A DNA stretch of 64,000 bases from Basidiobolus meristosporus CBS 931.73 (lineage: Eukaryota > Fungi > Basidiobolomycota): the NCBI GenBank assembly GCA_002104905.1, contig MCFE01000016.1, positions 186,001-250,000 on the forward strand, given 5' to 3'. Below are positions 15,884-64,000 of the stretch, one piece after another. The notes under the pieces are model-generated. The model saw only the letters and a program-made list of their open reading frames with translations, was not told the DNA's origin and did no database searches. How positions within the stretch are numbered: position 1 is the first letter of the stretch; every line of letters starts with the position of its first letter. Made by a program: the position numbers and the translations under genes.

Positions 15884-15895
15884 GGTTATGAGCCC
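15884..15895 (+). promoter_or_regulatory. Primer-binding site (tRNAiMet anticodon-arm type)
   Basis: GGTTATGAGCCC directly after the LTR; reverse complement GGGCTCATAACC matches the initiator tRNA-Met anticodon arm. Confidence 0.85.
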
Positions 15896-19834: not shown

Positions 19835-19849
19835 CAAGCACCCTGACAA

Positions 19850-35467: not shown

Positions 35468-38400
35468 TCAATTCTTGTGCCGTCCTACAAGAGCATGAAA
35501 AATACTCCAGCAGCTGCTTTTGATGTCGAATGGCTCGTCTGATTGCGCAAAATATCCTCGCATATTATCAGGAGCATTTCGAGGAACGGATCGTGGCCTG
35601 TACCCGTCGCTGCTGTATCTGCTGTGGGGTTCTGTGACCTTCGGTTCTTGAGAAGTTCGGTATTCGTAATGAGAGTCGGTGGCATTCGGTTCTTGGTAAG
35701 CTCGATACTGGTGATGGAATTCGGTATCGTTCGGCTCTTGGTAATCTCGTGGCGCTTGTGTACTTGACCGCCGAGTGAACGTGGAACTGATCCTCTTCAT
35801 GAGAGGCGTGGGGCTGAATTTTCGGTGGAGAGAATGATTCCTTGAAGTATGGCTTGAGCTAAGTGCAGGTGAAAGTGATACTTGATCATGTCTAGTCGAA
35901 TGGATGGATTCTACTGTGGTACGGGATGAAAATCGAGATTGGCGTTGAGTGATGAAGCTTGGTGCGATGTACGGTGTTTCCGTCCGCCATTCTGTAGAGC
36001 TGGGTGTATCGTTGAGATCACACTCGTATATAGTATTCTCGCTATAGTCAATACTCGGAAGTCTGGCTTTTTCTTCATCTTGCGTTGTTTCTATCGAATC
36101 TTCTTGCGAGCAGGAATCCAACTCGGAGGCACTCTCCTCACCTTCGATGATATTGCTTTTGCTGTCAGTGAGCTGAGATTGAGTGAAATATCGAAAATGA
36201 ATTGGAATAATCGGGTTGGTGTAGGAACGTTTCTCTGTCATGGGAGGGCCTTCATATTGATCGGGAACCAGGTCGCAATCATCGAGAGTGGGTGGTTGGT
36301 CCTCGTGTAATTTCAGTGATTCAAAGGAGAGATGGACCCGACGAGAAATGAAGCAGGGACTCTCCACCACCAATGTATTTTCAGGTTGTATATTGAGTGG
36401 TTGAAAGCTATCAGCATGTAAGTCGTAGTCGAAAATATCGGCTGAATCCTCTTTAGGAACTTGGTGAGGTTTCCAAGGATTATTATCTTCTACAGCTAAT
36501 TCATCTAGATTGGCATCAACTAACTCCGGATTGTCTTGCGTCTCAGTAGATACTTCAGAGGAGGGAGTGCTGCTAAGCCGTGAAGAATCTTGGCTTTTGT
36601 GAAAATCGTGGAATTTTCCTAACAGTAGCTTTTGAAAATATTCTGACTCCTTCAGGCATATCTGGATAGGGGCTGGAGCTTCACTATGCTGTTGGGTAAT
36701 ACAACCAACCGCAGACCGAGGTCGAAGTGCTTTGCACAGCTGAGGTAATTTAGGTGTCGGGAGCTCGATCTGAGGACTTGACGCGCATAAAGTTATGGCT
36801 TTCCTATACCTTCCGGACTTTCTGAAGGCACTTAAAACACGCGTGTCGATAGTTGGTTTTTGGATCTTATCTACACCGGAGAAAGAGATGTTTACATAGG
36901 CATTCTTGGGCTCGGAATGCACAGACGATTGAGAAAGCAGTAGACAGTGAATGTGTGATCCACAACTATTACTCTGATCTTGGTATAGTGTACTAGGGGA
37001 ATTATCACGATGATTCCAACTTGCCACAATCAGTGTTGCTGTATTCTCAACTCCTTCAGTTTTGGTAATGGATGAAAAGTTGTGGAGTGTTTGTTTGGAT
37101 GCTTTTCCGGGAAGGAGCACTATAGCAAAGCTCAGCTGTGGCTCAGCCGCATTTTCAGCTATCAATTTTCTAACACCCAGCATACTGCCTTTATGCGAGC
37201 TAAGCTTTGGCTTGTATCTTTGAAAAGTCTGTGGCCACTGAACAGCATAGCTCGCGGCTTTAGCTCCATGAGCTGAGGAACAATTTCCGAGGGTGAATTC
37301 TACAGTCTCCGAGGGGCTTCCCTTTAATGCCAACTTTTGAAGATATCCTAAGATTTCAACTGAGGTTGACTTCCACTGGTTTGCACCATGAGTGATGCTT
37401 ACATCTCTACTGACTGTATTTTCCAGCTCCAATACGGTATCCATCAATGGTGCATTGGCTTTGGAATAACTAAATAAATGGATAAGAATCCCTCATCCAG
37501 CAAGTGATCTCAAATTCAATGGAATAGTAGGTTACCTCTTAAGGGAAGCATCCCGATCATGGTGTATGATTTGCAAAAGCTCCCTGAGGTTGGTTGAATT
37601 ACGACTGTTGTAGTGCAAATTTCGAACCGAATCTTCACTCAAGTGGTTGATTTTGTTATCCAAGAACAGATTAAAAATCTTAGCGGCACTGTGTTGCTCC
37701 TCCTGTAACAAGGCGCTAGGGCAACGATCGGAGGCTGTATTTTGTGTGAAGGGACCTAACTGATGGACAGATGATTTTCCAGTGAAAACGTCAGCTGCAG
37801 AACTAGACGAAAGGGCCATGATATCTGTAGTTACTTGTGGTAGTTTATACTCCACATTATTACCCAATGTGATTGTAACTATTATGCATATACTAGGCTT
37901 TCCGAGTATATCCTTAACCTCGAGTGCTATATTGATCTTCTGCATGCTATAGTGAGGTTCGCTCTCAATGTTGATTTGTTCCCTGTCACAGTGATTTATA
38001 GGATTCTCATAGACACTCTTGAACTCGCCCTGATTAGCTCCTACACCACAACCTCCTATGAACTCATGAGCTCCGTGCTGTTGGCTTCTTGGCTGTATGG
38101 AACATTGCACATTTGAATCGTACGGATGGTCAGCTGATTGCCTTTGCAGGCTAGAGTTACCATTGGCATCAATAGGGAAAAGCCCACTTTTCTGTTGCGA
38201 GTCAAGCTTCAATATATACTGCGTGTCATTGTTGATGTTGTTACTTTGATGCTCGTCATTTCGGCCTGTGATACGAAGTCGACTATCGTGATAATACACT
38301 TGGCCTGAAGAATCTGCTTTATCCAGAGTCGCAGCCGCGGAACTATTATGCCACAATAGTTGCTCATTAGGGCCCAGTTTTGTTATTCCTATTTTTGTGC

Positions 38401-41400
38401 AATATTCCATAGCGTTCTTGAGGCTCCCATTGCTGCTGTATTCGAGATTGTTTGTCTGCTCCTTACCACCACCTTCGTCGCAAAAGGTTCGAACCCTGAT
38501 GCCCGCAGCATTCATTCCATACGGCTGGGCGTTCTGATCAGCATGAGAATCACCACCATTACTCTGAATAACATCCTGTTCAATCATATCCCGAAAGCCT
38601 AGACTATTGGTCGAAATATCTGAATCCCTACATGGAGACGAACGTTCTTCTGGCTTGTATTGATGCGCATCGATGCACATATCGTTTAGAGATATGCTAG
38701 ATATGTGAAATGCAGTAGATTCAGTCTCTGTCTTCGCCAGAGCGCACCCCAAGTTTAGATCCATACAATGAGGCACATCTATTGATGAATCTATTAATCG
38801 GTTTTCACTAACTGTCTGGTCGTTTTCTACGAGATCGGCTTCAGTTGTTTCGTGATATTGGACTTTGCAAAAGCTATCCCCAGCCTCTGTTGTGTGTAAA
38901 ATCGCTGTATTACACTGCTCCGTATCGTCACCGTCCACTGGATTGATTTTTGAACTGAATTCTTGGGTTGTTGGGCTTGGAATAGTAGTCTCTATATCAA
39001 GAGATTGTTTTTCGAAGATAACCCGGTTCTCCTCTATCGTACGCTCCTGTATATAGTATGCTGGATCAGAATCGCCACTCGGGAAATGGTCGCTGCTTCC
39101 TTGGTTACAATTCGATTTAGTGCTGTCATGTTCGATAGCTCCATCCTTTAAGCCTTCTTCCCCGCTGACTGCAATATCCAGATGATCACAAGATATTATT
39201 GCATGGTCAGCTACGTCGTCCCCGCCATCAAAGTGACCTTCATTTGATTGTAGTTCATCTATCCTTGTTGATACCTCAATATCTAGAGAATTAGCAGTGT
39301 TTGTAGCTGGTTCATTCTGGCACTCCTGCTCCACTTCAGCACTCAGACCCTCATCTATGACTCCACATGAGGAATTGATGGCCTCAATTTTGTCAATTTG
39401 ATCATGCGATCGCATGGTTAATTTGTCCATTACAGGGGCCTCATTGACGATCTCGCACTCGCCAACAACCTCGTGTACCACCCCGTCTTTGACCGAGGTA
39501 AACTGTTCCTCAAGCTGGGCGTTTTCGGTGTCACTCTGGTCAAACCCATTAGAGGAGAAAACAGGTCTATCAGTGGCACCATTTTCGTAGTCAGAATTCA
39601 GCATTGCACCAACACAATCTGTTGGCAATACTTGTTCTTGTGAGTGCAATGGATTAGATGCTGCTTCATTAGGATTTTTTTCCTCAGCCAGAAATGAGCG
39701 CTTGGGGGAATTCAGATCTTCCCCAGGCTTTATCTGCTCTGCCAGTTCACCAGGGGTGTCATTGGATGTTGAAGAGTGGACGACTACTTCGCCTACACAG
39801 TCTACCATAGTGATTTCTGTGGGAAACCGTGGATCTTCATCAGGATCGCTTGACTTCTCCACTCCCTCTTCCACATTGTCTGGTGAAGAACTAATCATCG
39901 TTTCTTCCGTAGAGATCAGACTGCTTTCTACCAAAATCGATTGCTCACACAACTGGGAGTCTACACGGGCAATTGGGGATTCGTTCATCATATCAGATGT
40001 AATGAGTGCTTCTTCTAGGGGGGTAACGTGATCTTCATCCATTGTGACTGATTGCTTAGGTGAGGACAAGTCTTCATTGAGGTTACTCAACTCGATCACT
40101 GCTGTTTCAACCTCTCCCCCAAGTGTGGAAGGCTCAACATCCATCTCTTCCAGGGAGGTCACATTGCTTTCTTCTGTTGTAGCCGATTGCTCTGACAAAT
40201 GGGTATCTTCACAGGAAGCCACTGGCTCTTCTATCACCTTTTCATTTGTCATGTCTGAATTAGACTCAATGGCTCCTTCTGAAGAAATTACAGGACTTTC
40301 GCCTAATATGGTTGATTGCTCAGGTGAATAAGAGTCTTCATTGAGATTACTCTTCTCAACCACCACTGCTTCATTTTCTTCCTTAAGTAACGAAGGCTCA
40401 ATACCTATCTCTTCAGATGAGTTCGAGTTGTTTTCTTCGGTTGAAACTGATTGCTCAAGCAAATGGGAACCTTTGCTGGAAACTACTGGCTCTTCTATAG
40501 CATTCTCGCCTGTCACGTCTGAATTAGATTCGATGGTTGCTTTTTCTAGTGAGATAACAGGACTTTCATCTGCTATGGCTGATTGTTTAGAAGTGTATGA
40601 GTCTTCAACTGTTGCTTCAATCTCTTCTCCAATCATGGATGGCTCAATACTTGGCTCTTCCGGAGAAATCATATTGCTTTCTTCATCCATTACGATCAGA
40701 TGCTCAGGCGAATAGGAGTCTTGGCTGGAAACCGCAGACTCCTCCACCACCTCCTCACTAGCTGTATTAGGTTCGATGACTGCTTCCTCTAGTGAGGTAT
40801 CAGGGCTCTCCTCCACCGAAACTGGCTCTTCAATGGTGCATGAGTCTTCATTGGGGACGCTCTGGCCCTCCTCTATTTCTTCACTCACCACCTCTTCCAG
40901 GTTAGTAGCACAACTCTCCTCTACTATAGTTGATTGCTCAGCGGCGCACGGGTCTTCATGACAATTATCCAACTCTTCAGGCACTTCTTCGCTCGCTTCA
41001 GCAGGTATAGCAGACTCGATAGCTACCTCCTCCAGAGAAGTAACAGGCCCAATGACTACTTCCTCCGAACAGTGAGTTTGATCCTCTTCTAATACAACTA
41101 ACTGTGTGGGTGATTGTGAGCCTTCATTGGAGATGCTCAACTCTCTCACTATCTCTGCATTCATTTTTTCAGGTGAAGAGAGCTCAACATCAATCTCTTC
41201 TGAAGGTGTTGTATTGCTTTCTTCCGTTATAACTGATTGCTCAGGCAAAAGAGGATCTTCACTGGAAACCACTGGCTTTTCCACCACATCCTCATTTGAT
41301 GAGTCCGATATATTTAACTTGGTGGCTACATCGTCTGGAGAGGTAATAGGGCTCTCTTCTACGGAGATTGGTTCCTTAATAGAGTATGACTTTACGTTAG

Positions 41401-42952
41401 ATGTTTTCGAATCTTCCTCTGTTTCTTCTGTATCCACTTCCTCTGGAGAGGAAGTTTGATCGCCTTCTACAACAACTGATTGAGTGGATGGCTGCGAACC
41501 TTCTTCAAAAATGTCCGACTCTAAGGCCATCTCTCCGTTCGTTTCTTCGTGTTTAGAGAGCTCGACATCAGCCTCTTCCGGAGAGACCGTTTTGCTTTCT
41601 TCTGTTACAATCGATTGCTCATTCAGATTGGAATTTTCACTGGGAATCACTGGATCTTCTGGTATTTCTTCGTTTGTTGTATCTAATATATTAGACTCAA
41701 CGGCTGCCTCTTCCAGAGAGGTAGCTGGGCTCTCTTCCACAAAAATTGATTCTTTAAGGGGGCATGAATCTTCATTAAAAATGTTCGACTCTTCTGCTGC
41801 TTCATTCGCTTCACCATATGTAAAAGACTCAGAAACTACTATTTCGTCAACTGGTATTGATTGTGTAGGTGAATGTGAGTTTCCTTCGGACATATATAAT
41901 TCTCCAGCTGTTTTATCGCTCACTTCCTCATGCGCAGATGCCATGTCGCATACTTCTTCTAGGATCGCCAGTTCGGGCAAACTTGAGCATTCGGTGGAGC
42001 CCATAGGTTCTTCGGTTCTCTCGTTACTTGCTTCAGTCTGTACGGAAGTCTCGGTAACTGTTTCTTCTGGAGATGAATCCGAATTTTTGTCTGCAAACGC
42101 CACCTCGTCACTTGCCGTATTTGAGTTAGACTTGGTAGCTGTTTCCTCCAGTGAAGTATCAGGGCTCTCCTCCACCGAAACTGGCTCTTCAATGGTGCAT
42201 GAGTCTTCATTGGGGACGCTCTGGCCCTCCTCTATTTCTTCATTCACCACCTCTTCCAGGTTAGTAGCACAACTCTCCTCTACTATAGTTGATTGCTCAG
42301 CGGCGCACGGATCTTCATGACAATTATCCAACTCTTCAGGCACTTCTTCGCTCGCTTCAGCAGGTATAGCAGACTCCATAGCTACCTCCTCCAGAGAAGT
42401 AACAGGCCCAATGACTACTTCCTCCGAACAGTGAGTTTGATCCTCTTCTACTACAACTGACTGTGTGGGTGATTGTGAGCCTTCATTGGAGATGCTCAAC
42501 TCTCTCACTATCTTTGCATTCATTTTTTCAGGTGAAGAGAGCTCAACGTCAACCTCTTTTGGAGACACTAAATCATTCTCTGCCGTAAGTGCTGTTTGTT
42601 CGGGTGGATCTGGAAATTCGTTAGAGTCAAGAGGTTCTTCCACCAATACTCCATTCGTTTCTTCAAGTGTGAAAGAGTCGGCGGTTTTTTCTTTTAGGAG
42701 CGAGTTACAACTTTCGTGTATCAAAGTTGACTGCTTTGTCGAAGGATAACCTTCTGCATCGAAAGGCGCTTCCACTATATCTTCGACCAGCTCATCAAGG
42801 GTATCGGACTCAGTGGCTATCCTCTCACAAGTATTGTAGGCACTTTCTCCTAAAATAGGGGGCTGTCGAGCTGAGTGGATGCATTCACCGGAAAGGCTCG
42901 TCTCCTCCACTATTCCCTCTTTCTCTATGCAGGGCTGGTCAGCTGCTGACAT
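35468..42952 (-). CDS. Very large acidic low-complexity repeat protein (~2470 aa, two exons)
   Basis: ORFs 37532-42964 and 35468-37447 join in frame through a 66-nt GTAACC...TTTAG intron (37535-37470), giving ...SLK-S-YSKANAPLMDT; Glu/Ser-rich degenerate repeats. Start uncertain. Confidence 0.7.
40791..41201 (-). repeat. Internal ~410-bp duplication, copy 2
   Basis: Near-identical to 42150-42560 at an offset of 1359 bp (453 codons); encodes SPEKMNA..SVEESPDTSLEE. Confidence 0.9.
42150..42560 (-). repeat. Internal ~410-bp duplication, copy 1
   Basis: Matches 40791-41201. Confidence 0.9.
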
Positions 42953-44541
42953 GTAACAAAGCAATATATGTTTCTCTACGGGCCACTACTTGTCCCAAAA
43001 GTGATTGAATAGCTTCACTATAACCGCCAGAGCCAGCCAGTGTATGTATATATGTAAGTCATAGGCCAGGACAAGAGCATAAAAGAATACCTGTAGATGA
43101 GCTATATTATCCTCATAATACCAAGGATTCTATTAATGCTTGAATTCCGTTTGGCCTAAGAGTGCTCAATTGGCTGATGTTGGTAAAATAGTCACATTGA
43201 GCTGTAATACCATCGCACGTCCTGCAGTACAATTGTCGGATTAATATCATTAGATGGCCTTGAACAAAGATCTACCTAAATGGACCATTTATTTTAGAGC
43301 CAACAATGGTATTCAATACTAATTCGTCAGTGTTTTTGGCAACCAAGAACATATTATTGGAAACATGCAAGTCTTCTCCGAATCCAACATGAACATTTAC
43401 TATGTGAATCCGAATACACCTGCATGCTCTTCTCTGGATATGACAATAGTAACAGTGGCGTTTCTAGCGAAATAAAGAATCCATGTAGCGAACTCGGCCT
43501 CGGTGGCATCACATACCCCTACTTGTTCCCAGTGTTGTTGGCACGCTAGTTGCTATTTCGGACCTGCTTCTCATTTAAGCACTAGTGAGCATACATGCTC
43601 AATCACATAATAGGTATCGCTTGCTCCACTTGTCACCCTCTAGCTGTAGTTGGCAATCCGCTGGGTTAAACGCTGAAGATGCATTTTGTCGTCAATTGAT
43701 GAGGTTGTGCTACTTGAAACCTTGCTTATGCTATGTGTCGCAAAGCATACATTAAGCTTCTATCCTTCAGGTGACCTGATTTGCGTTGTGAGCACCAAAT
43801 GAGGCAAACACCCTGGAATTTAAGCTTTCTAGCAAGGTACGCCTCGGATCAGCAGGGGCTTGACTGCCAAGAATCGTAACACTGATTAGTGGTCGTCTCC
43901 GAATCAGAATCACCTTACCAGCGTTTCTACGGGACCCATCAGCAAGCAACAAGTAACAGTTGGTGCGGATTTAATTGCATGCTTAAACAACACTGACCTT
44001 TGGGTGGAAGGGGATACTTTGGGCCAATCACCCCTCTGACGTCTATCTGCCTTTCACGATAAAGATGATTGGCACATGGTCCAGGTTTGAGAAGATACAT
44101 CTGACGCTCATTGCATGAGTACGATTCGGGACCAATATCGATTTCAAGGGCTCCCCATCCGCTAATCGCCGCATTTGCATGATTTATTAGGTCTCACATG
44201 ATGGAGTTCTCTCACTGGTCTTTAGGTGAATTTTCGTGACGAAATATAGAAAACAATCTTAACAAGGGATTGAAATTCTCCTTTTTTCTGGATTTCTTCT
44301 CAAGCCCGTATTCCCTCCTCTCGCTTGGTATTACGGTTTTGTTTTTGGGTTTTCTTTAGTTTCATTTTGGTGACTTTCTCTATTTCTTGTCGGTATATTT
44401 TATGTATGGTTACTCTGATATTGGTGTGTGTATTAACTTGAAATCAACTTCTCTTTCGTGCTGTGTATCGTTGTCATATCTTTCTGTTGAATTTTGTGAT
44501 TTTCCGTGATCTTTCCACCCTGGATATCAAAAACACAGAAC

Positions 44542-55395: not shown

Positions 55396-55986
55396 TCCTG
55401 AAACTACTATATTAAATCCTTTTTTCTTGATTTACAAATGGCCTCAAAGTATTGGACTTGATGCATTATACTGGGCTACATAGCTCTTGTGCTGCCATAG
55501 CATGCCCAGGAATGCCTATGGAGCCTGTTGATCCTATATTCAGCCACATAACAAGTAGTACTTTCCTAAACCTTAATGCATAGCAACCCCAAGGCTTCAC
55601 CTGCCTATCTAGAGAAGCTTAATATTTGGACTCTTCTAAGTTAACAAGAGCAATGATAGTTCTTCAGTGCTCAAGACACTGTTCAGTAGGAAGGTGGGTA
55701 GCAAGAGGGGTAGGAATAATATATGAGCAACATTAATAAGGGAATATGATAGGAATCAATACTTGTCATAAAGGAAAGGTGCTGTCTCAGATATTGCTTC
55801 CAAAGGTGTGTCAAGCATTTCTGGTAGGCCAACTTGGGCTTTTCTTACTGCAGAGTATAGTTGGCAAACTTCTTGACATCTGGATCACCAAGTATAGTTC
55901 TCCAGCAGGAGCCAGGTATAGTGTGGTTAGTTCTCTTCCAGGCCATGATCAGTGGATTGTTGCAGTGGTGAGTCTGCACTATAATC

Positions 55987-56647
55987 TGTTGTAAAAATTC
56001 GTATTTTCCACCTAAATATTCACCTAACTTAGTCACTTAGATCACCACCTTCAAATTCTAGAGAATACTGACCAAATTCCTTGTTGGGATTTACTTAGAA
56101 TATTTTCACCAAAATGCCAGGTACCCAGAACATGAAAATTCTCAAAGTTGTCCAAATAGCCCCAAACTTTGCACACATGTTCTTGGGACCTTCCTTAACC
56201 TATTCTACGTGTTTGTAATGCCAAGACCATGTAAAAGTATCAATACTACTTTTACATTCAATAAATCATTAAGTGAAAACCACATAATCTACTTGTTCTC
56301 CAAATCACTTCCAATATCTCCAAGACTCTTACAACAGGTTATGAGCCCCAAGCTGTCACTCTCTGCAATGTCTACTACTGCTATTACTGGAATTTTTCCC
56401 TCTGCTGAAAAGTTGGATGGATCTAACTACCAAGTGTGGAAGGTGAAGATGAAGATGCTGCTGCAAGAAAGAGGCCTTTGGGATATTGTCATGGGAGAAG
56501 AATGCCCTCCTAAAAACGTGGGAGAGGAAGCCTTAAAGTACCAGAAGAAAGAACAAAGTGCCTTTAACTGCATTTGCCTTAATGTCAAGGACAAATTGCT
56601 AATTCAATGCTCAAGAGCAAAAACGGCAAAGAATGCCTGGAAGGCAC
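55987..56647 (+). mobile_element. Copia element family B: 5' LTR + PBS + 3'-truncated gag
   Basis: LTR 55987-56336; PBS GGTTATGAGCCC 56337-56348; gag KLDGSNYQVWKVKMKMLLQERGLWDIV...AKTAKNAWKAL ends abruptly at TTAGGG (56648). Confidence 0.9.
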
Positions 56648-56783
56648 TTAGGGTTAGGGGGAGGGAAAGTCCCCAAGGTAGGTGAAATCTTTATTTGAAT
56701 GCAGACAAGTCTAACTACAAATAAAGAAGCCAGCTGGGAATAGAAGATTCCCAAAGTAAACACTAAGTTGAATATGAATAAAT

Positions 56784-57512
56784 CTAAGCTAAAGTTAAGG
56801 CAGTATCCCAGAGTACACTGGAGTTCAGGTTCATGTGGGAGTGAAGTAGATAAGCTTGAGAGATATAATAATCTTTGAGGAAGTGGGTAACAGCAGGTGA
56901 AGGGGAGTTTTTGATAAGTGAAGTGAATCTTGAGAGCAGAGATTCCTCTAATGAGAAGGTCTTGTAAACTGGAGAATCAGGAAACTCTTTAAAGGCATGG
57001 TCAGTAGGTTCCCAGTAGAACTGGTCAGAGACATTTTGAGAGAACTCTTTAGCAATACTTTTGTCAAGTACTACCTCCAGAGTGTGATGGTTGATAAATC
57101 TCATGTTAACAATCTTGGATAAATTGTAACCTTGTTGCTTGAGATACATCCTATGCTCAGATATAGGAATGAACTCCACATTGGCAAAGTAGCAGACAGC
57201 CCAGTCAGTAGCAGGAGGCAAATCAGAAGTAGTAGGAAACTTTCTTTTAGTCTTGGGAGGAGCGGCAGGATGTCTTGAGGAAGCAGGAACAGGCTTTTTG
57301 ACAGCCTCAGAGTAGGAAGAGTGAGCAGGAGCAGATGATTCTTGGGGAGTCTTGTCGACAGGAACCGTTGGCTGAGAGACAATAGATTCTTGCAGATCAG
57401 AGAAGGCAGAAAACAGCTTTTGAACTTGTTTCTTGAGTAAAGCATTTTCAGCTTCAACAAGTGCAAGCCTTTCCTCAAGGAAGGAAATCTGAAGGGAATG
57501 GAGTGAAGGCAT
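56784..57512 (-). CDS. LINE ORF1-like protein (242 aa, coiled coil + conserved C-terminal domain)
   Basis: ATG 57512 (MPSLHSLQ); LEERLALVEAENALLKKQVQKL coiled coil; W...YFANV....IS..R......SKIVN......LE...D block shared with LINE ORF1. Confidence 0.8.
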   Translation of the reverse strand: MPSLHSLQISFLEERLALVEAENALLKKQVQKLFSAFSDLQESIVSQPTVPVDKTPQESSAPAHSSYSEAVKKPVPASSRHPAAPPKTKRKFPTTSDLPPATDWAVCYFANVEFIPISEHRMYLKQQGYNLSKIVNMRFINHHTLEVVLDKSIAKEFSQNVSDQFYWEPTDHAFKEFPDSPVYKTFSLEESLLSRFTSLIKNSPSPAVTHFLKDYYISQAYLLHSHMNLNSSVLWDTALTLA

Positions 57513-57553
57513 AAGAAATAAGAAGAAGAGGGTAAGATGGGGTGGGAGGGTGG

Positions 57554-58105
57554 GAAAATTAGCAGGGAGAAGAGAAGGAAGGAGCAAAAATTCCAGAAGT
57601 CAGAATTTATAGATGGATGGACAAGGGTAGATGGATGGATTATTCCTAGGTTAGGAAAATTAGCAGGGAGAAGAGAAGGAAGGAGCAAAAATTCCAGAAG
57701 TCAGAATTTATAGATGGATGGACAAGGGTAGATGGATGGATTATTCCTAGGTTAGGAAAATTAGCAGGGAGAAGAGAAGGAAGGAGCAAAAATTCCAGAA
57801 GTCAGAATTTATAGATGGATGGACAAGGGTAGATGGATGGATTATTCCTAGGTTAGGAAAATTAGCAGGGAGAAGAGAAGGAAGGAGCAAAAATTCCAGA
57901 AGTCAGAATTTATAGATGGATGGACAAGGGTAGATGGATGGATTATTCCTAGGTTAGGAAAATTAGCAGGGAGAAGAGAAGGAAGGAGCAAAAATTCCAG
58001 AAGTCAGAATTTATAGATGGATGGACAAGGGTAGATGGATGGATTATTCCTAGGTTAGGAAAATTAGCAGGGAGAAGAGAAGGAAGGAGCAAAATTCCGG
58101 AAGTC
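57554..58105 (-). repeat. Tandem array of 101-bp monomers (~5.5 copies)
   Basis: GAAAATTAGC recurs at 57554, 57655, 57756, 57857, 57958, 58059; copies essentially identical; TATAAA on the minus strand of each full unit. Confidence 0.95.
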
Positions 58106-58151
58106 TTAGGGTTAGGGGAGGGAAAGTCACCAAGGTAGGTGAAATCTTTAT
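58106..58151 (-). mobile_element. Tail-only (~46 nt) 5'-truncated retroelement stub
   Basis: Plus strand TTAGGGTTAGGGGAGGGAAAGTCACCAAGGTAGGTGAAATCTTTAT, immediately followed by a second tail at 58152. Confidence 0.8.
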
Positions 58152-58240
58152 TTAGGGGGAGGGAAAGTCACCAAGTTGGTGAAATCTTTATTTGAGTTAA
58201 GAACTAATCTAGGTACAAATAAAGAAGCCAATTAAGAGGT

Positions 58241-61090
58241 CTAGAACCTCTCTAATAAGTAATCTAATTTATGTTTTGTTTCATCTCTTATGTTTGTTTC
58301 AATAAAGTAAAGCTCATCAGGGGTAAATATAAAATTCAGGGGTTTTGGGGGAAGTACAAATTGTAGATGTTTCTGATCAATATAATCCAAGACTGGAACC
58401 CAGCCTGGGATTAGGTGTAGTAGGAAAGGTGTGTGGACTTGTAAGTAGCTCTGCCACATAGATCTTAGATGGTCCTGAGCCAGTAGTCTTGGTTTCTCAG
58501 CTTTTTGAAGTTTTGAAGCAAGCTCTGTTACTACAGCAGAGCCAACCAGGGTGTGCCAGCAAGAAGATTTCAGGGAGGAGTTAGATTGAAGCCATTGTTT
58601 GATGGAGGGGTTATGTGATTTCTGAAGTTTGACTAGGAAGGAAGCACGGAGATAGACCATTCGGATTTGGTATGGGTAGAAGCCAAAGGCTCCATTAGTT
58701 GCATGGATATAGGGAGATACTGGAAGATAAGGTACCAAGGATCTGATACACTGATGGAGAAATTTATCCAGGCGGTGAAGTTCTCTGGAGGTTAGGGGTA
58801 TAATGTGGAGACCAAACTCAAGTACCGGCAGTACATACTGCTTCAGAAGTATAGGGATCTTTTGAATTGGAGTGTCTGGAGTGACTACTACCAGAAGCTT
58901 TTTGAGAGCCTGTTGAGCAAGACGGATCCTATTATTCAGGTGGAGCTTTGAGTCAATCCCATGTTGACAAAATGGCAGACCTAGATATATTGCAGTTTGT
59001 TGTGGCAGAATGCTAGTGTTCTGTATAGTTGTAGTGCATCCAATTGGGACTGTCTTGGAAATTGAGAGTGAGAGGTTGTTGGCAGCCAAGTACTTCTCAA
59101 TGATGGCAGTGTCTGCTATGGGATTAGGAGTAGCAATCTTGATATCATCCGCATAGAGAGTTAGTAGTGGATAGGGAGAGTCTGGTGAGGGGCCTTTTGG
59201 AAATAAAGGAAAGTCATGTAGGAATATCACAAATAGTAAGGGACCTAGTACAGATCCTTGGACTACTCCATTTGGAACCTCATAAGTCTCTGATGTACAA
59301 CTTGGATGCAAAATTTTGGCTGAGTTCTCACAAAATAGAGAACGTACAAGAAGGGTCATTGGTAGTGTGGTAACTGCTAATAGCTTTCTCCAAAGCAGAG
59401 CTCTGTCCACAGAGTCAAAGGCTTTAGTAATGTCAAACAGAATGGTTGGAAATGAGAATTGAAGTGAATGATCATGGCTTAGCACTACAGCCATATCCAA
59501 GGAGAGTTTGGGCAAGAAGCCAAACTGAGAAGGATGGAATGGATATAGTTGAGATTGCAAGGACCTTGCAATTATAAGCTCAAAGATTTTCCGGCAGGTT
59601 GGCAGGAGTGAAACTGGCCGGTAAGAACCTGGGAGTGAGTGTTTCCCCTTCCCTTTGTATAAGGGTATTACATTTGCCTGTGACCAGGCCTTTGGGGTAG
59701 TCAATTGTTGGGCACAGATAGAGTAGAATGGGAGAAGTAAGTGACTCATTTTGGAGTAGCACACCCGGAGTAGATCGTAGGTAATCAAGTCATGTCCAGG
59801 TGCAGTATTTGCAGGAAGCTTCTTTAAAATTTTCTCCAGAAGCTTTGCTGAAACCAAAATTGGAGATGTTGGACTGCTAGATATGTTACCAGTATGGTAG
59901 AAAGGAGGAGTGGGATGCACGGTTGAATCAAAGAATATAGGGGCCAGTTTGTCTGGTGATGGTATACTCCTTGCTTGGGGTCTCATGGCTTTATATACTC
60001 TTGATATGGACCTTGTGGTGGCATTCATATTTACTAAGGGCAAGGTATCCATGATATGAGCCCATAATCTAGTGTGCTCAGTGATCTGTAGTGACTTGGA
60101 GTAGGAGATTGCGCTTTCCAGGAGGTTCTGTGTTTTTGGGTCAGGGAAACATAGGTAGCTGGAATTTAAGGCAGAAATGATGGATTTCCATTTAAGTTGG
60201 TTTGCAGATGGCTTTTGGTAGGACTTGGTGGGCAGGGCCAGACAGCCAGTGATTATGATGAAATGCTGGTAAAATAGCCATAATGCATTTATATCATCAC
60301 AAATCCATGCAGGTAAGCTGGGAAATGCATATTCTGTAAGCAAGGATAGGTAGCTGGCAAAGTCCTGTGTCTGTGATACTGAAGCTTTGGCTGGCAGGAT
60401 TGTAAATGGCTGAAGAAGGGTGCCAATTGGTAGGGTTTTTCTGGCAGAAATGATAATATGTATTGGCTTGTGATCAGATTTCTCTAGTGAACCACAGCTG
60501 ATATCCTCTGGAATGCTTGTAACCTGGTGGATGTATTGTAAGGCAGCTGGAGTAGCTGTTACCCAGTCAACACAACGTTGAGCTTGCTGAGTGTTTACAG
60601 TGACCAGATGGTTTTGTCGGAGGAACTTTGTAAAGTGCTCCTCTCTAGTTCTAAGTCTGGATGAAATAGTGGTGATATTTTCAGGGTGGGGAATATTTAT
60701 ATCTCCCACTACCATACAAGGGATTGATGAGCTGTTAATGAATTCTGATGTGGCCAAGAAAATTGCCAGTGTTATGGAGTTAGACAGAGATGGAGGGAGA
60801 TAGATAATAATGGCTACTATAGTTGGAAGTGTTAGAGCATAGCAGTAATACTCATAGATGATGGATACATTTGCTGAGGGTGCAAGCTTAGAAGATGAAA
60901 GAGCAACAAGTGCCATTGAGTGAGCTGGAAATCTTGGGTGAGCAGATGAATATGCATTCAGTCTAGAGGGAAGTTTTGGCAACTTAACATCAATTAGTAG
61001 GAGCAAGGAATATTCCTTTTTCAGTAAGTTTTCTAATTCAGCTACAGTTGGAGTGATGGAGTTGCAATTGAGTAAGAGTATGTTTTGTAG
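58241..61090 (-). CDS. LINE ORF2: AP-endonuclease + reverse transcriptase (no ATG upstream of APE motif I)
   Basis: Open from 61090; APE ILLLNCNSI, IYLPP, VGDIN, CVDW, SDHKPI; RT TAPGHDLI, YRPVSLL, QFGF, DITKAFDSV, GVVQGSVLGPLLF, YADD, YLGL. Confidence 0.93.
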   Translation of the reverse strand, partial: LQNILLLNCNSITPTVAELENLLKKEYSLLLLIDVKLPKLPSRLNAYSSAHPRFPAHSMALVALSSSKLAPSANVSIIYEYYCYALTLPTIVAIIIYLPPSLSNSITLAIFLATSEFINSSSIPCMVVGDINIPHPENITTISSRLRTREEHFTKFLRQNHLVTVNTQQAQRCVDWVTATPAALQYIHQVTSIPEDISCGSLEKSDHKPIHIIISARKTLPIGTLLQPFTILPAKASVSQTQDFASYLSLLTEYAFPSLPAWICDDINALWLFYQHFIIITGCLALPTKSYQKPSANQLKWKSIISALNSSYLCFPDPKTQNLLESAISYSKSLQITEHTRLWAHIMDTLPLVNMNATTRSISRVYKAMRPQARSIPSPDKLAPIFFDSTVHPTPPFYHTGNISSSPTSPILVSAKLLEKILKKLPANTAPGHDLITYDLLRVCYSKMSHLLLPFYSICAQQLTTPKAWSQANVIPLYKGKGKHSLPGSYRPVSLLPTCRKIFELIIARSLQSQLYPFHPSQFGFLPKLSLDMAVVLSHDHSLQFSFPTILFDITKAFDSVDRALLWRKLLAVTTLPMTLLVRSLFCENSAKILHPSCTSETYEVPNGVVQGSVLGPLLFVIFLHDFPLFPKGPSPDSPYPLLTLYADDIKIATPNPIADTAIIEKYLAANNLSLSISKTVPIGCTTTIQNTSILPQQTAIYLGLPFCQHGIDSKLHLNNRIRLAQQALKKLLVVVTPDTPIQKIPILLKQYVLPVLEFGLHIIPLTSRELHRLDKFLHQCIRSLVPYLPVSPYIHATNGAFGFYPYQIRMVYLRASFLVKLQKSHNPSIKQWLQSNSSLKSSCWHTLVGSAVVTELASKLQKAEKPRLLAQDHLRSMWQSYLQVHTPFLLHLIPGWVPVLDYIDQKHLQFVLPPKPLNFIFTPDELYFIETNIRDETKHKLDYLLERF

Positions 61091-62749
61091 TCAGGCAGAC
61101 TCTGAGGTTGCCTGTTCCTGCTGAAACTCTTGCACTGCCCTTTGTAAATTTCCAGAATTATTCCACAACTCTTCAAATGGAGCTTGTGTAATGTCTTTCA
61201 GGATTCTAATTGCTTCCTCTTTCAAGAAGTAGGCCACATCATAGGTTGGAGCCTGTTTCTAAATGGCAGCAAAGAAAGCCATAATTGCCATGTGAGCTGG
61301 GGGCTTGTTGAATATTCCTGGCTCAGTGTCCATTGACTCTGGTGGAATGATTGTGAATTTGGTAGACACCCAGTTTAGATTTTTTGCCAGATACTTAGTC
61401 AATGCAGTGGAGAAGTTTCTGTCCACAATCATTTCTAGGATCTTTCCTCTTCTCCAAGCTAGGTTAACAATTTTTGAAGTGTCAATATTTAGAGAGCGGA
61501 ATGTATGTCTGATGTTTGATATAGTAGTCCATGGAACATTGGCAAAGTATAGCAAGGACCAATTCTGGAGCTGAGGTAAGTTTGCTGGAGGCTTATAGGT
61601 AGACTTCCTGGCAGGTTGTGTGGTAGGCTTTAGTGTTTCCAAGGTAGCAAGTTGTGGTTGAGACTTTTTAGAATTACGTATGACTTTGGAAAGAATTCTG
61701 CCAGCAACTGTGTCAGGAATGTTAGTACTTGTTGATGGTGCAGGGCCTGGCTCCTGGTACTGCTTTTGTAGAATACTTGAGTATGTCTCTTTTTGTTTTC
61801 CTTTATCCAAGGTGCTATGCCTTGGAATGGGATTTTGGGGAATAGAGACTTCAGGTATCAACTCTGGGGTCTGGTGATTGTCCAACATTGTTGCTTGAGC
61901 TTCCAGCTTTTCCTCTAAGATTTGAACTCTCTGCTTAAGCTCATCATTTGACGCTATAAGTGTGGCATTGTTTGGAGCCAGGTCAGGTGTTGAGTTATGA
62001 AGGCAGGTTGAGCAGCGTTCTAACTCCTTTGTTTGGTCATCCAACTTTTCTTCTAAGGTTTGAACCCTCAATTTGAGTGCACCATTTGAGGTTAGAAGCT
62101 CCAAGTTATCAGCCTGCAACTTCTTTAGATCCCTAAATATCTCAAATATCTGTGCCTGCAAGTCTTTAGCAGTGATATTTCTGATGGGTACTATTTCCTC
62201 TAGGAGTTCTTCTTGAGCCAGGTGAGCATTGGGACTTGAGCACTCTACTGAAGGAGTTGCTGGAATTTCCTCAATGTCTGACAAAACTCCTTCACTTGCA
62301 GCATCAGTTGTATGATTATCCTGAGTAGCAGCAACAACCTCAAGTTCACAAGGACCAGTTGAAGTAAAACATTTCTTGGGTGGGACTATCTCAAGAGGCT
62401 TGGGTGGGACTTTTGCTTTGAATGGTGAGGTACTAGGATCAAGAATTGGGACTGGGACAGAAGCTATGGTGTCTATTTCAGCAGCAGTTGCTGTAGAGCT
62501 ACTGGGGCTCTGACTGGCTGGTTTTTTGGTCTTTGCCTTCACTCCTGCTACCAACTGGTCAAGACCACAAATCTTTGTACAGGCCTTGCATTGGACCTGC
62601 TTGACCTTATTCTTGCCAGCACGGCCATTGAGCTTCCATTTGCCTCTGATACCACAGGCAGTGCAGTCAAGTTTTGAATACCATCTTCTGAAGAGAGTCA
62701 GATCCTCTTTTTCCTCACTGGTAAGAATCACCTTACTTTGTGGAGGCAT
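61091..62749 (-). CDS. LINE ORF1 (Zn ribbon, coiled coil, conserved C-terminal domain) with an internal TAG at 61261-61259
   Basis: CTACG...LNG...QVQCKAC; coiled coil LKLRVQTLEEKL; frame continues 55 codons past the TAG to TGA at 61093-61091, and those codons align with the paralog at 56784. Confidence 0.85.
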
Positions 62750-62811
62750 ATTTCAATTTCCTAAAAAAAAAAAAAACAAAATGAGAATCTTTAGTGTGAT
62801 GTAGTCTCTAT

Positions 62812-63339
62812 GGTTAGGGGGGAGGAAAGTCACCAAGTGGTGAAATCTTTATTTACTTATGACAAGTATCTAAAGAAGCCAAGTTAATCTGAAGTTATTC
62901 CTAGAAAGCTAGGTCTGAGAGATATCTTCCTGGTAAGCCAGGTCTGAGAGTTGAGAAGCTGAGTGGTACTATATTTCCTAGTTAGCTAGGTCTGAGAGAG
63001 GTTTCCTGGAAAGCCAGGCCTGAGAAGTGAGAATCTGAATATATCTGAGCTAAGTTATACTGGTTTGCGGTAGCTGAATTGTGGCCGGAATGGCCAGTAG
63101 ACTGGGGGAACTGAGAAGAATTTCTGGGCAATCACTGGCCATATTTACTAGGCAAATCTGGCCAATTAGCATTTCAAGGATCTCAGCCAATCAGAGCCTT
63201 TACTTTGCCCGATGGTTGATCAAGCCATCTCCCAATGAGCACACATCAATTTATTAATCAAATTTTGCAGGATCCAGGATTTGAACCCACAACCATGGGT
63301 ATGGAAGGGTTAGGGATAACCACAAGGCTAAGTGTTCTT
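62812..63339 (-). mobile_element. tRNA-derived SINE, copy 1 (528 bp), with LINE-type CCCTAA tail
   Basis: A box TAGCCTTGTGG (63330-63320), B box GGTTCAAATCC (63287-63277), 32-nt spacing; 3' stem-loop + CCCTAACC tail. Confidence 0.85.
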
Positions 63340-63866
63340 GGTTAGGGGGAGGAAAGTCACCAAGTGGTGAAATCTTTATTTACTTATGACAAGTATCTAA
63401 AGAAGCCAAGTTAATCTGAAGTAATTCCTAGAAAGCTAGGTCTGAGAGATATCTTCCTGGTAAGCCAGGTCTGAGAGTTGAGAAGCTGAGTGGTACTATA
63501 TTTCCTAGTTAGCTAGGTCTGAGAGAGGTTTCCTGGAAAGCCAGGCCTGAGAAGTGAGAATCTGAATATATCTGAGCTAAGTTATACTGGTTTGCGGTAG
63601 CTGAATTGTGGCCGGAATGGCCAGTAGACTAGGGGAACTGAGATGAATTTCTGGGCAATCACTGGCCAAATTTACTAGGCAAATCTGACCAATTAGCATT
63701 TCAAGGATTTCAGCCAATCAGAGCCTTTACTTTGCCCGATGGTTGATCAAGCCATCTCCCAATGAGCACACGTCAATTTATTGATCAAATTTTGTTGGAT
63801 CCAGGATTTGAACCCACAACCATGGGTATGGAAGGGTTAGGGATAACCACAAGGCTAAGTGTTCTT
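63340..63866 (-). mobile_element. tRNA-derived SINE, copy 2 (527 bp)
   Basis: A box 63857-63847, B box 63814-63804; about 10 substitutions and one G indel relative to copy 1. Confidence 0.85.
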
Positions 63867-64000
63867 GGTTAGGGTTAGGGGGGATGATCATCACCAAAGG
63901 GTGAAATCTTTATTTAAATAATAAATAAAGAAGCCAAGTTTGAATATGAATATCTGAGATGCAGGAAACCTACAAGATAAACTTGGACTTTGCTGTATCC
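63867..64000 (-). mobile_element. 3' end of a further CCCTAA-tailed element (runs off the window)
   Basis: Plus strand GGTTAGGGTTAGGGGGGATGATCATCACCAAAGGGTGAAATCTTTATTT...TAAAGAAGCCAAG; same tail grammar, different body. Confidence 0.8.

What the first reader, a model, noticed from the sequence alone, without database searches (positions are those of the whole stretch)
56648..64000. Head-to-tail consortium of telomere-repeat-tailed retroelements (LINE + ORF1-only element + tRNA-SINE): a fungal HeT-A/TART-like array
Seen: six consecutive minus-strand units (3' ends at 56648, 58106, 58152, 62812, 63340, 63867). Each begins on the plus strand with TTAGGG-type repeats (TTAGGG TTAGGGG.. or GGTTAGGGGG) followed by the same tail. 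All share one polarity, with no host DNA and no TSDs between them, and their bodies are of at least three different kinds. Established: TTAGGG is the widespread fungal telomere repeat. Drosophila HeT-A/TART/TAHRE, Magnaporthe MoTeRs and terminal Penelope-like elements form same-polarity arrays with 5' ends distal, and an RNA ending in CCCUAA can pair with a G-strand 3' end to prime reverse transcription. Inference: one APE-RT enzyme mobilises several partner RNAs onto telomeric-repeat DNA, extending rightwards. I know of no described fungal system combining an APE-LINE, a gag-only partner and a SINE with such tails, but I cannot search the literature.
Basis: partly seen in the sequence, partly recalled or inferred. 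Interest (0 to 1): 0.95.

Follow-up and report, generated by a model that had tools for sequence, protein, structure and literature searches.

The report
Telomere-tailed retroelement array in Basidiobolus
The last 8.6 kb of this Basidiobolus meristosporus contig is a real head-to-tail pile-up of retroelements (a LINE, two ORF1-only elements and a SINE-like element) that all end in the telomere repeat; it recalls the transposon telomeres of fruit flies, but it is not yet shown to lie at a true chromosome end.

Summary
The window is Basidiobolus meristosporus CBS 931.73, contig MCFE01000016.1, positions 186001-250000. The contig stops 1,232 bp past the window, still inside the array, and its last bases are TTAGGGTTA.

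There are at least 8 minus-strand units:
- an APE+RT LINE with ORF1-UGA-ORF2 in one frame
- two kinds of ORF1-only element
- two SINE-like copies
- two fragments of 46 and about 70 nt

All end in one conserved 3' module of two hairpins and a C-run, followed by 1-3 CCCTAA repeats. LINE relatives with only 43-65% ORF2 identity carry the same module, as does an ORF1-only element from B. ranarum.

Two further loci of the same genome hold mixed arrays of the same polarity. One lies at a contig end. The other lies 25-35 kb inside a contig, with host genes on both sides. An unrelated second LINE family there also ends in CCCTAA repeats. No solitary copy occurs in 87 kb of non-array DNA.

Every junction with unique DNA lacks a telomeric tract. 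A conserved endonuclease is present. tRNA ancestry of the SINE-like element is unconfirmed.

Verdict: a real, apparently undescribed telomere-tailed LINE/ORF1-only/SINE-like consortium that builds same-polarity arrays. A HeT-A/TART-like terminal role is plausible but unproven.

The parts
55986..56343 (+). Copia-type LTR-like repeat just upstream of the gag fragment. It is part of the non-element DNA on the proximal side of the array.
   Evidence: It belongs to repeat families D2/D6/D7, which also have copies at 15.5-20.4 kb. A related LTR follows the Copia pol fragment in L037.
56344..56647 (+). N-terminal part of a Copia gag ORF, cut off by the array at 56647/56648 (...GGCAC|TTAGGG). This is the founder junction. 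There is no telomeric tract here.
   Evidence: Pfam Retrotran_gag_2 (1.1e-13) and DUF4219 (6.2e-11); sequence.
56648..58105 (-). U1, ORF1-only element type 1. The 3' module plus (CCCTAA)2 tail lies at 56648-56731. An intact 242-aa ORF lies at 56787-57512. The 5' region holds 5.5 monomers of 101 bp (57553-58105), each with TATAAAT.
   Evidence: ORF. Homology to the LINE ORF1 C-terminal half: BLASTP 4e-11, collinear alignment. Tandem repeat at 99%. Copies 96.0% and 97.7% identical at another contig end.
58106..58151 (-). U2, a 46-nt extremely 5'-truncated U1-type unit consisting of hairpin 2 and the tail only.
58152..62811 (-). U3, LINE-A. Layout: 3' UTR module and tail 58152-58240; ORF2 58241-61090 (APE + RT, 949 codons without a stop); conserved in-frame UGA 61091-61093; ORF1 61094-62749 with a premature in-frame TAG at 61259-61261; short 5' UTR 62750-62811.
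   Evidence: RVT_1 3.4e-20. The APE model has pLDDT 89 and matches APE1/ExoIII at E about 3e-12. The UGA-CUN arrangement is present in 5 lineages. The premature stop is absent from the sister copy. A 98.6% identical copy lies in L036.
62812..63339 (-). U4, a SINE-like non-coding element of 528 nt. Its 5' head has A-box-like and B-box-like motifs. Its 3' module and tail match the LINE's.
   Evidence: tRNA ancestry not confirmed.
63340..63866 (-). U5, a second SINE-like copy of 527 nt, 97.9% identical to U4 and with the identical 5' end.
63867..64000 (-). U6, the 3' end of ORF1-only element type 2. It continues past the window to L010 20750, with a 266-aa ORF and 3.2 monomers of 103 bp. It is followed by U7 (about 70 nt, U1-type) and by the terminal TTAGGGTTA of the contig.

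Best explanation
This is a community of non-LTR retroelements of Basidiobolus that share one way of starting reverse transcription.

Shown:
- An autonomous LINE encodes ORF1p and, through an in-frame UGA-CUN stop, an APE endonuclease + RT.
- Its RNA ends in a conserved module: a 10-bp stem, a CACC/GGTG hairpin and a C-run. This is followed by a single-stranded CCCUAA(1-3) terminus.
- ORF1-only elements and a SINE-like element carry the same module.
- Units stand head to tail in one polarity, with direct 5'-end|tail junctions.
- In all three loci of this genome the 5' ends point to the nearest contig end, with the G-rich strand running outward.

Inferred:
- The partners are copied in trans by the LINE RT. 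The RT binds the module and initiates within the CCCUAA terminus on a DNA 3'-OH.
- Arrays grow because each new copy is primed at or next to the previous one.
- The most likely route is addition to an exposed chromosome or broken end (first a break in a Copia gag, then the 5' end of the last unit). Abortive synthesis and template jumps would give the 46- and about-70-nt units.
- On this reading the array is (sub)telomeric and extends outward, to the right in the window.
For: - Array and junctions.
- The contig ends 1,232 bp past the window, still inside the array, on TTAGGGTTA.
- Shared 3' module. It is present in LINE, ORF1-only and SINE-like units, in LINEs with 43-65% ORF2 identity, and in a B. 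ranarum ORF1-only element. The structure gives 96.8% paired cells against 41-49% when partners are slid. Two pairs change on both sides. Fold z-scores run from -2.3 to -4.5, with the telomeric tail unpaired.
- APE fold and RT.
- Second array at the end of contig MCFE01000090.1 with the same polarity.
- In that array the LINE-B copies decay towards the proximal side: 7, 22 and 36 private substitutions per 833 columns, and the most proximal copy has a degenerate invariant motif.
- The polarity points to the nearest contig end in 3 of 3 loci. In B. ranarum the tail likewise faces unique DNA while the element runs off the contig start.
- A second LINE family (27% RT identity, unrelated ORF1, different 3' UTR) also ends in CCCTAA repeats and shares the arrays.
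- No solitary copies in 86.8 kb of non-array DNA.
- U4 and U5 differ by 2%, so they are separate copies rather than a fresh duplication.
Against: - No contig end is a proven telomere. Contig 16 stops 9 nt into a tail and contig 90 stops inside an element. Young tandem repeats break assemblies anyway.
- One array (L037) lies 25-35 kb from its contig end. It has about 6 kb of host genes on its 5' side and Copia plus an NRPS gene on its 3' side.
- No junction shows a telomeric tract longer than 3 repeats, so pairing with real telomeres has not been seen.
- The APE catalytic motifs are invariant across lineages, which argues that nicking of duplex DNA matters.
- The age gradient rests on one array and could reflect subfamily differences.
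- That TTAGGG is the telomere repeat of Basidiobolus is assumed from other fungi, not shown.
Confidence: 0.5

Rival explanations
1. The arrays are interstitial and built by tail-targeted insertion. The LINE endonuclease nicks TTAGGG-like DNA, and the short telomere-like tails of resident copies are its preferred targets. After a founder inserts anywhere, new copies land in existing tails and nest head to tail. Contig ends then coincide with arrays only because assemblers break at young repeats. On this view the family behaves like microsatellite- or repeat-specific LINEs, with no role at chromosome ends.
For: - A conserved, apparently functional APE domain.
- An internal array with host DNA on both sides, whose 5'-most unit is a full-length LINE-C abutting host DNA, as expected of a founder.
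- Tails are the only TTAGGG runs of 2 or more repeats in the regions examined.
- Contig 90 ends inside an element rather than on telomere repeats.
Against: - Founders sit at sites that are neither telomeric nor similar to one another. A TTAGGG-specific nuclease would rarely produce these.
- Polarity relative to the nearest contig end is the same in 3 of 3 loci, and unique DNA meets the tail side in 4-5 junctions against one 5'-side junction.
- In L036 the unit next to the 3' flank is the most decayed. This model accommodates that only if a still older upstream unit exists.
Confidence: 0.33
2. Multi-unit blocks are made in a single retrotransposition event. After reaching the 5' end of one RNA, or aborting early, the RT jumps to the 3' module of another RNA, and the resulting concatemer is integrated once. 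Arrays would then be few events rather than many. This can operate within either of the other two models.
For: - Direct 5'-end|tail junctions without any target sequence.
- Very short units of about 20, 46, about 70 and 83 nt that consist only of the 3' module.
- 2-nt overlaps at some junctions.
- Template jumping is an established property of LINE-type RTs such as R2 (my own knowledge).
Against: - Units within one array differ in decay (7, 22 and 36 private substitutions).
- U4 and U5 differ by 2%. Each of these could also come from different source RNAs.
- The model does not explain the polarity towards contig ends.
Confidence: 0.12
3. Assembly artefact or chance: the array is a collapsed or chimeric consensus of dispersed copies.
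For: The array lies at a contig end of a draft assembly.
Against: The same head-to-tail organisation appears at two other loci of this assembly and in independent Logan short-read assemblies (L004, L005). In the B. ranarum assembly (L011) a full tail is followed directly by a second 20-nt tail fragment before unique DNA. The motif count is far above chance.
Confidence: 0.03

Closest known systems
Drosophila HeT-A / TART / TAHRE telomeric retrotransposons (Jockey clade)
   Same: Mixed-family, head-to-tail, same-polarity arrays with 5' ends distal. An APE+RT element (TART) works alongside a gag-only partner (HeT-A). Promoter-bearing repeats lie at element ends. (PMC13534243 abstract; otherwise my own knowledge.)
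   Different: Those elements end in poly(A), and their host has no telomerase repeats. Here the RNA ends in the canonical telomere repeat, a SINE-like partner is included, the host is a fungus that presumably has telomerase, and a terminal location is not proven. One array is internal.
Bombyx TRAS1 / SART1 telomeric-repeat-specific LINEs (R1 clade)
   Same: APE-type LINEs whose integration depends on the telomeric repeat. They have a fixed orientation relative to the repeat strand and accumulate near chromosome ends (my own knowledge).
   Different: TRAS and SART insert at a defined nucleotide inside long (TTAGG)n tracts and carry poly(A). Here no junction lies in a tract of more than 3 repeats, and the repeat is part of the element's own 3' end.
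Endonuclease-deficient Penelope-like elements (Athena, Coprina)
   Same: The 3' ends carry short reverse-complement telomeric repeats thought to pair with G-strand overhangs. They are restricted to chromosome termini (abstract of 10.1101/2021.04.23.441226; my own knowledge of Gladyshev & Arkhipova 2007).
   Different: They have a different RT class and no endonuclease. Here there is a LINE-type RT (best solved match is human L1 ORF2p) with a conserved APE domain.
Fungal telomere-associated retrotransposons MoTeR, FoTeR and Cnl1 (CRE/SLACS-type clade)
   Same: They are fungal, form arrays at chromosome ends, include non-autonomous partners, and have tandem repeats biased to the 5' region (PMC12857005; PMC1635262).
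   Different: Those encode a restriction-like (REL) endonuclease and form their own RT clade. Here there is an N-terminal APE, a separate ORF1, UGA read-through and a shared 3' stem-loop module.
Stringent LINE-SINE pairs sharing a 3' tail (e.g. eel UnaL2 / UnaSINE1)
   Same: A conserved 3' stem-loop followed by a few short terminal repeats is shared by a LINE and its non-autonomous partner. The RT recognises the stem-loop and starts in the repeats (my own knowledge; see the PMC5135761 abstract).
   Different: Here the terminal repeat is the telomere repeat, the partners include ORF1-only elements, and the copies are arrayed rather than dispersed.

Membership tests
Non-LTR (LINE) retrotransposon with APE endonuclease | Reverse transcriptase domain of LINE type | tested here: met
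   Pfam RVT_1 3.4e-20. The best solved relatives are human L1 ORF2p (1e-22) and R2 (1e-9).
Non-LTR (LINE) retrotransposon with APE endonuclease | N-terminal apurinic/apyrimidinic-type (EEP fold) endonuclease with catalytic residues | tested here: met
   Pfam is only weak: 21 bits, below the cut-off, for the window copy, and 27.5 bits for P0001. The AlphaFold model (pLDDT 89) matches APE1/ExoIII at E about 3e-12 with TM about 0.62. Y, GDxN, D and SDH are invariant in 23 LINE APE domains.
Non-LTR (LINE) retrotransposon with APE endonuclease | Variable 5' truncation of copies; target-site duplications | tested here: inconclusive
   5' truncation is abundant (U2, U7, and the truncated copies in L036 and L037). 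TSDs could not be tested because no single-copy insertion with both flanks was available.
Stringent LINE/SINE partnership (shared 3' end) | The non-autonomous element carries the LINE's 3' recognition structure and terminal repeats | tested here: met
   The alignment and consensus structure cover LINE, ORF1-only and SINE-like units.
Stringent LINE/SINE partnership (shared 3' end) | SINE head derived from a pol III gene (tRNA/5S/7SL) with an internal promoter | tested here: inconclusive
   An A-box-like motif lies at nt 10-20 and a B-box-like motif at nt 53-63, and two copies share the identical 5' end. ARAGORN finds no tRNA and Rfam reports none at E<=10.
HeT-A/TART-type telomere-forming retrotransposons | Head-to-tail arrays of one polarity with 5' ends distal | tested here: met
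   Window, L036 and L037: all units have one polarity, with 5' ends towards the nearest contig end.
HeT-A/TART-type telomere-forming retrotransposons | Arrays constitute the physical chromosome end | tested here: inconclusive
   Two arrays run off contig ends. One is internal. No terminal (TTAGGG)n cap is seen.
HeT-A/TART-type telomere-forming retrotransposons | Poly(A) 3' end; Jockey-clade RT | tested here: not met
   The 3' ends are CCCTAA repeats, not poly(A). The RT clade was not determined.
TRAS/SART-type telomeric-repeat-specific LINEs | Insertion at a fixed position inside long telomeric repeat tracts | tested here: not met
   All junctions carry 3 or fewer repeats. Founder junctions lie in Copia gag, Copia pol or unique DNA.
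EN-deficient Penelope-like elements (Athena/Coprina) | Absence of endonuclease; PLE-type RT | tested here: not met
   An APE domain is present and conserved. The RT is of LINE type. Only the telomeric 3' terminus is shared.
CRE-clade fungal telomeric retrotransposons (MoTeR/FoTeR/Cnl1) | Restriction-like endonuclease downstream of the RT | tested here: not met
   No such domain was found. The endonuclease here is an N-terminal APE. The family definition is taken from PMC12857005.

The most novel reading that the evidence does not exclude
Basidiobolus chromosome ends are built or repaired by a multi-family guild of APE-LINEs, ORF1-only elements and a SINE. Their RNAs end in the telomerase repeat and are reverse-transcribed directly onto chromosome or broken ends. 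This would be a fungal, telomerase-compatible counterpart of the Drosophila HeT-A/TART system. It would be convergent with terminal Penelope-like elements, but would use endonuclease-bearing LINEs and would include a SINE.
Probability: 0.35. Interest if true: 0.85.

Novelty: new variant of a known kind. Interest (0 to 1): 0.66.

Why it matters
Retroelements that specialise on chromosome ends are known in four forms:
- Drosophila, with poly(A) elements and no telomerase
- silkworm, with insertion into long telomeric tracts
- EN-less Penelope-like elements
- CRE-clade fungal elements with a restriction-like nuclease

This would be an APE-type LINE lineage that encodes the telomere repeat at its own RNA 3' end. 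It shares that end with ORF1-only and SINE-like partners, and with an unrelated LINE family, in an early-diverging fungus. If terminal, it would be an independent origin of retroelement-based end extension in a telomerase-type background. It would also give a tractable case for how RT priming on G-strand ends evolves.

Even if interstitial, it is a clear example of a stringent 3'-module recognition group that includes gag-only elements. It also shows a LINE with a conserved UGA-CUN stop between ORF1 and ORF2, which suggests read-through expression of ORF2.

Tried and rejected
- Exact look-ups of the LINE ORF1, the kinesin ORF and the 290-aa carrier ORF found nothing. The contig end was reached only through the annotated carrier protein.
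- A metagenome scan with the tail pattern found nothing. A protein-pattern scan found only distant LINEs at mostly 24-33% identity (a few short segments up to 50%). The tail pattern is also absent from the prokaryotic-genome and viral collections.
- A homology search with the U1 ORF found a single B. ranarum fragment.
- tRNA detection on the SINE head failed with ARAGORN (default and relaxed) and with Rfam.
- The ORF1-only protein model shows a coiled coil, a beta-alpha-beta-beta-alpha-beta domain and a helical C-terminal domain (pLDDT 70). It has no significant structural match (best E 0.04, generic ferredoxin-like folds). An 'L1 ORF1p-like RRM' therefore remains an analogy of layout only.
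- A sequence profile of the APE domain finds no PDB entry. Only the fold comparison does.
- The Copia-like copy at 15.8 kb in the window diverges beyond the LTR, so it could not give the uninterrupted target sequence.
- The RT clade (Jockey, Tad1, L1 and so on) could not be assigned because no labelled reference set was available.
- Literature searches found no description of this system or of the Basidiobolus telomere repeat.
- I considered that the window's Copia-gag junction and L037's Copia-pol junction might be two halves of one insertion. I rejected this because the tail faces the Copia fragment in both, which is incompatible with a single insertion.

Full report
**1. Where the window comes from**

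A single-exon GH15 gene of the window is on record in NCBI assembly GCA_002104905.1, contig MCFE01000016.1 (251,232 bp). This places the window at contig positions 186001-250000. A neighbouring mitochondrial-carrier protein is annotated as Basidiobolus meristosporus CBS 931.73. Fetching that gene with flanks gave the rest of the contig as locus L010, where window position = L010 position + 44400. Most of the window is gene-rich host DNA with GH15, kinesin, CBS, ARID and GH17 genes. The last host gene ends at 55395. It is followed by a Copia-type LTR and the first ~100 codons of a Copia gag (Retrotran_gag_2, DUF4219). That ORF is cut at 56647|56648 by the array.

**2.

- The tail motif GGTGAAATCTTTATTT occurs six times, all on the + strand and all at the predicted places. 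Shuffles predict 0.06.
- TTAGGGTTAGGG occurs three times against 0.26 expected. Isolated TTAGGG hexamers elsewhere in the window are at chance level.

Read in element sense (minus strand), the junctions are:

| Junction | Sequence at the join |
|---|---|
| U7 / U6 | ...CCCCCTAACC \| U6 5' monomer |
| U6 / U5 | ...CCCTAACCCTAACC \| AAGAACAC (SINE 5' end) |
| U5 / U4 | ...CCCCCTAACC \| AAGAACAC |
| U4 / U3 | ...CCCCCCTAACC \| LINE 5' UTR |
| U3 / U2 | ...CCCCCTAA \| ATAAAGA (U2) |
| U2 / U1 | ...CCCTAACCCTAA \| U1 5' monomer |
| U1 / Copia | ...CCCTAACCCTAA \| Copia gag |

There is no host DNA and no duplication between units.

Beyond the window the contig continues for 1,232 bp. It holds:
- the rest of U6, with a 266-aa ORF and 3.2 perfect 103-bp 5' monomers
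- U7, a U1-type fragment of about 70 nt
- the final bases ...TTTTAGGGTTA

The array therefore has at least 8 units and runs off the contig end. The G-rich strand is oriented 5'->3' outward.

**3. What the units are**

*U3, the LINE.*
- ORF2 has an RVT_1 domain. Its closest solved relative is human L1 ORF2p.
- The N-terminal 240 residues give only sub-threshold Pfam APE hits.
- They carry the motifs LLLNCNS, IDVK, YLPPS, GDxN, CVDW and SDH. Most positions of these motifs are invariant in five lineages.
- The Y, GDxN, D and H positions are invariant across 23 LINE endonuclease domains, and the S and D of SDH are nearly invariant.
- An AlphaFold model (pLDDT 89) matches APE1/ExoIII structures at E about 3e-12. 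The element is therefore an APE+RT LINE.
- ORF1 has an N-terminal Cys4 zinc-ribbon-like motif, a coiled-coil-like stretch and a conserved C-terminal half.
- In all five lineages available, ORF1 and ORF2 are in the same frame and separated by a single UGA followed by CUA or CUC. The APE motif starts a few codons later. This suggests ORF2 is made by stop-codon read-through.
- The window copy has an extra premature TAG at 61259-61261, 55 codons before that UGA. Relatives and a 98.6%-identical sister copy have a sense codon there. The sister copy has its own stop in ORF2.
- The LINE in the array is therefore young but not the active source.

*U1 and U6, the ORF1-only elements.*
- They are of two types, with ORFs 41% identical.
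- Their ORFs are collinear with the coiled-coil, central and C-terminal parts of LINE ORF1 but lack the zinc ribbon.
- The model shows a long helix, a disordered linker, a beta-alpha-beta-beta-alpha-beta domain and a helical C-terminal domain. It has no significant structural match.
- Both carry near-perfect 5' monomers of 101 and 103 bp, each containing TATAAAT and a telomere-like motif.

*U4 and U5, the SINE-like elements.*
- They are 528 and 527 nt, non-coding and 97.9% identical, with the same 5' end.
- They carry A-box-like and B-box-like motifs at nt 10-20 and 53-63.
- No tRNA is recognised by ARAGORN or Rfam. 'tRNA-SINE' is therefore unconfirmed.

**4. The shared 3' end**

All units end in GGCTTCTTTA...loop...AAATAAAGATT(T/A)CACC-loop-GGTG-pyrimidine spacer-CCCCCTAA(CCCTAA)(CC).

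The same module ends LINEs from Logan assemblies whose ORF2 is only 46-47% identical to the window's. It also ends an ORF1-only element in B. ranarum.

RNAalifold gives a 10-bp stem with a variable loop and a 4-bp CACC/GGTG hairpin:
- 96.8% of cells pair, against 41-49% when partners are slid.
- Two pairs change on both sides.
- Individual folds have z-scores of -2.3 to -4.5 and leave the telomeric terminus unpaired.

This is the anatomy of 'stringent' LINE/SINE partnerships. The RT recognises a 3' stem-loop and starts in short terminal repeats. Here those repeats are the telomere repeat. Trans-mobilisation of the partners is an inference from that shared module.

**5. Other loci**

A profile search of 1.84 billion representatives shows the family is narrow. 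About six representatives score above 370 bits before generic LINEs begin. Two of them are B. meristosporus gene models, and their loci were fetched.

*L036, the end of contig MCFE01000090.1.* The contig begins inside a U1-type element. It then holds, in order:
- a truncated LINE-B (48% ORF2 identity to LINE-A, same module)
- a truncated U1-type element
- a U3-type LINE
- 660 bp of other DNA
- a ~200-bp element with telomere-like ends
- two more LINE-B copies
- unique DNA and five tandem CHAP-domain genes

All units are in one polarity with 5' ends towards the contig end. The three LINE-B copies carry 7 (distal), 22 (middle) and 36 (proximal) private substitutions per 833 columns. The proximal one has a decayed invariant motif.

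*L037, contig MCFE01000243.1.* This locus is internal. It holds, in order:
- a SINE whose (CCCTAA)3 tail abuts host DNA
- about 6 kb with small host genes
- a 10-kb array: full-length LINE-C, a LINE-B fragment, LINE-B, a SINE, the ~200-bp element, LINE-B and a truncated LINE-C
- a Copia pol fragment and an LTR of the window's Copia family
- an NRPS gene

Again there is one polarity, with 5' ends towards the nearer contig end, which is 25-35 kb away.

LINE-C has 27% RT identity to LINE-A, an unrelated ORF1, a different 3' UTR and frame-shifted ORFs. It nevertheless ends in CCTAACCCTAACCC or CCCCTAACCCTAA. Two LINE families with different recognition sequences thus share the telomeric terminus and the same arrays.

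In 86.8 kb of non-array DNA from these loci there is no solitary copy of the module and no run of two or more telomere repeats.

**6. Mechanism**

Three routes give head-to-tail, same-polarity arrays with direct junctions:
- (A) serial priming on an exposed DNA end
- (B) endonuclease nicking of the TTAGGG tails of resident copies
- (C) template jumping between RNAs within one event

Points favouring A:
- founder junctions at unrelated, non-telomeric sequences
- the polarity towards contig ends in 3 of 3 loci, and in B. ranarum the tail facing unique DNA while the element runs off the contig start
- unique DNA almost always on the tail side
- the proximal-old gradient in L036
- the contig ending on TTAGGGTTA
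- two LINE families converging on the telomeric terminus

Points favouring B:
- the conserved APE
- the internal L037 array, whose 5'-most full-length unit abuts host DNA
- the absence of any demonstrated telomere cap

Contig ends are also expected wherever young repeats are arrayed, so their coincidence with arrays is weak evidence.

Route C best explains the units of about 20, 46, about 70 and 83 nt, and it can act within A or B.

I put A (terminal or sub-terminal growth) at about 0.5, B at about 0.33 and C alone at about 0.12. That TTAGGG is the Basidiobolus telomere repeat is an assumption from other fungi. I found no paper that states it.

**7. Comparison with known systems and novelty**

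- Known fungal telomere-associated retrotransposons (MoTeR, FoTeR, Cnl1) belong to a CRE/SLACS-type clade with a restriction-like endonuclease (PMC12857005). This family fails that defining feature.
- It fails the poly(A) tail of HeT-A/TART.
- It fails the in-tract insertion of TRAS/SART.
- It fails the EN-less, PLE-type RT of Athena/Coprina.
- It shares functional traits with each of them. With stringent LINE/SINE pairs it shares the 3'-module logic.

Literature searches found no description of it. I could not query Repbase or Dfam. I rate it a new variant of a known kind. The consortium and its telomere-repeat terminus are solidly shown. The telomere-building role is a plausible reading that remains untested.

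Noticed in passing
window 61091-61093; also L002 905-907, L003 1666-1668, L004 2669-2671, L009 2112-2114: In all five LINE lineages ORF1 and ORF2 are in one frame, separated by a single UGA followed by CUA or CUC. The endonuclease motif starts a few codons later. This is a conserved context that suggests ORF2 is expressed by stop-codon read-through, which would be unusual for a LINE.
   Followed up: partly
window 61259-61261; L036 about 3690: The window LINE has a private premature TAG in ORF1, where relatives and a 98.6%-identical sister copy have a sense codon. The sister copy has its own premature stop at ORF2 codon 149. Both copies are young, and each is broken once.
   Followed up: yes
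L037 6380-11700 and 15609-16413: A second LINE family, LINE-C, sits in the same arrays. It has 146-bp 5' monomers, a 530-aa ORF1 unrelated to LINE-A, an ORF2 in another frame and 27% RT identity. Its 3' UTR is different, but it also ends in CCCTAA-type repeats.
   Followed up: partly
L036 6849-7065; L037 13116-13321: A ~200-bp element with telomere-like motifs at both ends lies directly upstream of a truncated LINE-B at two loci, although the LINE-B truncation points differ. Its nature is unknown.
   Followed up: no
window 57553-58105; L010 20418-20751; L037 about 6380-6820: The 5' ends consist of near-perfect tandem monomers of 101, 103 and 146 bp. The 101- and 103-bp monomers contain TATAAAT plus a telomere-like motif (CCTAACCT or CCCTAACCC in sense). 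A terminal unit would therefore expose GGGTTAGGG-like motifs on the outward strand.
   Followed up: partly
L036 10790-18266: Five tandem genes encode 181- or 231-aa CHAP-domain proteins. This domain is typical of bacteria and phages. The genes lie about 1.7 kb from the array on contig MCFE01000090.1. This looks like a subtelomere-style expanded family, possibly acquired horizontally.
   Followed up: no
window 35468-42964 (minus strand): Two very long ORFs of 659 and 1,810 aa have no Pfam match. The larger one contains internal 264-nt direct repeats.
   Followed up: no
window 15388-20357 and 55986-56354: There is a cluster of Copia-type LTR fragments in direct and inverted orientation (families D2, D6, D7, I1-I9). 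The same LTR family borders the arrays in the window and in L037.
   Followed up: no
window 63310-63318 and 63837-63845: The head of the SINE-like element contains CCCTAACCC (sense) between its A-box-like and B-box-like motifs. This may be a coincidence or may relate to the telomeric theme.
   Followed up: no
L037 413-973, 2467-2769, 4368-4655, 5217-5474: Small paralogous ORFs sharing a ...QVDQTLYQPS... motif lie in both orientations in the 6-kb host segment between a SINE and the internal array.
   Followed up: no
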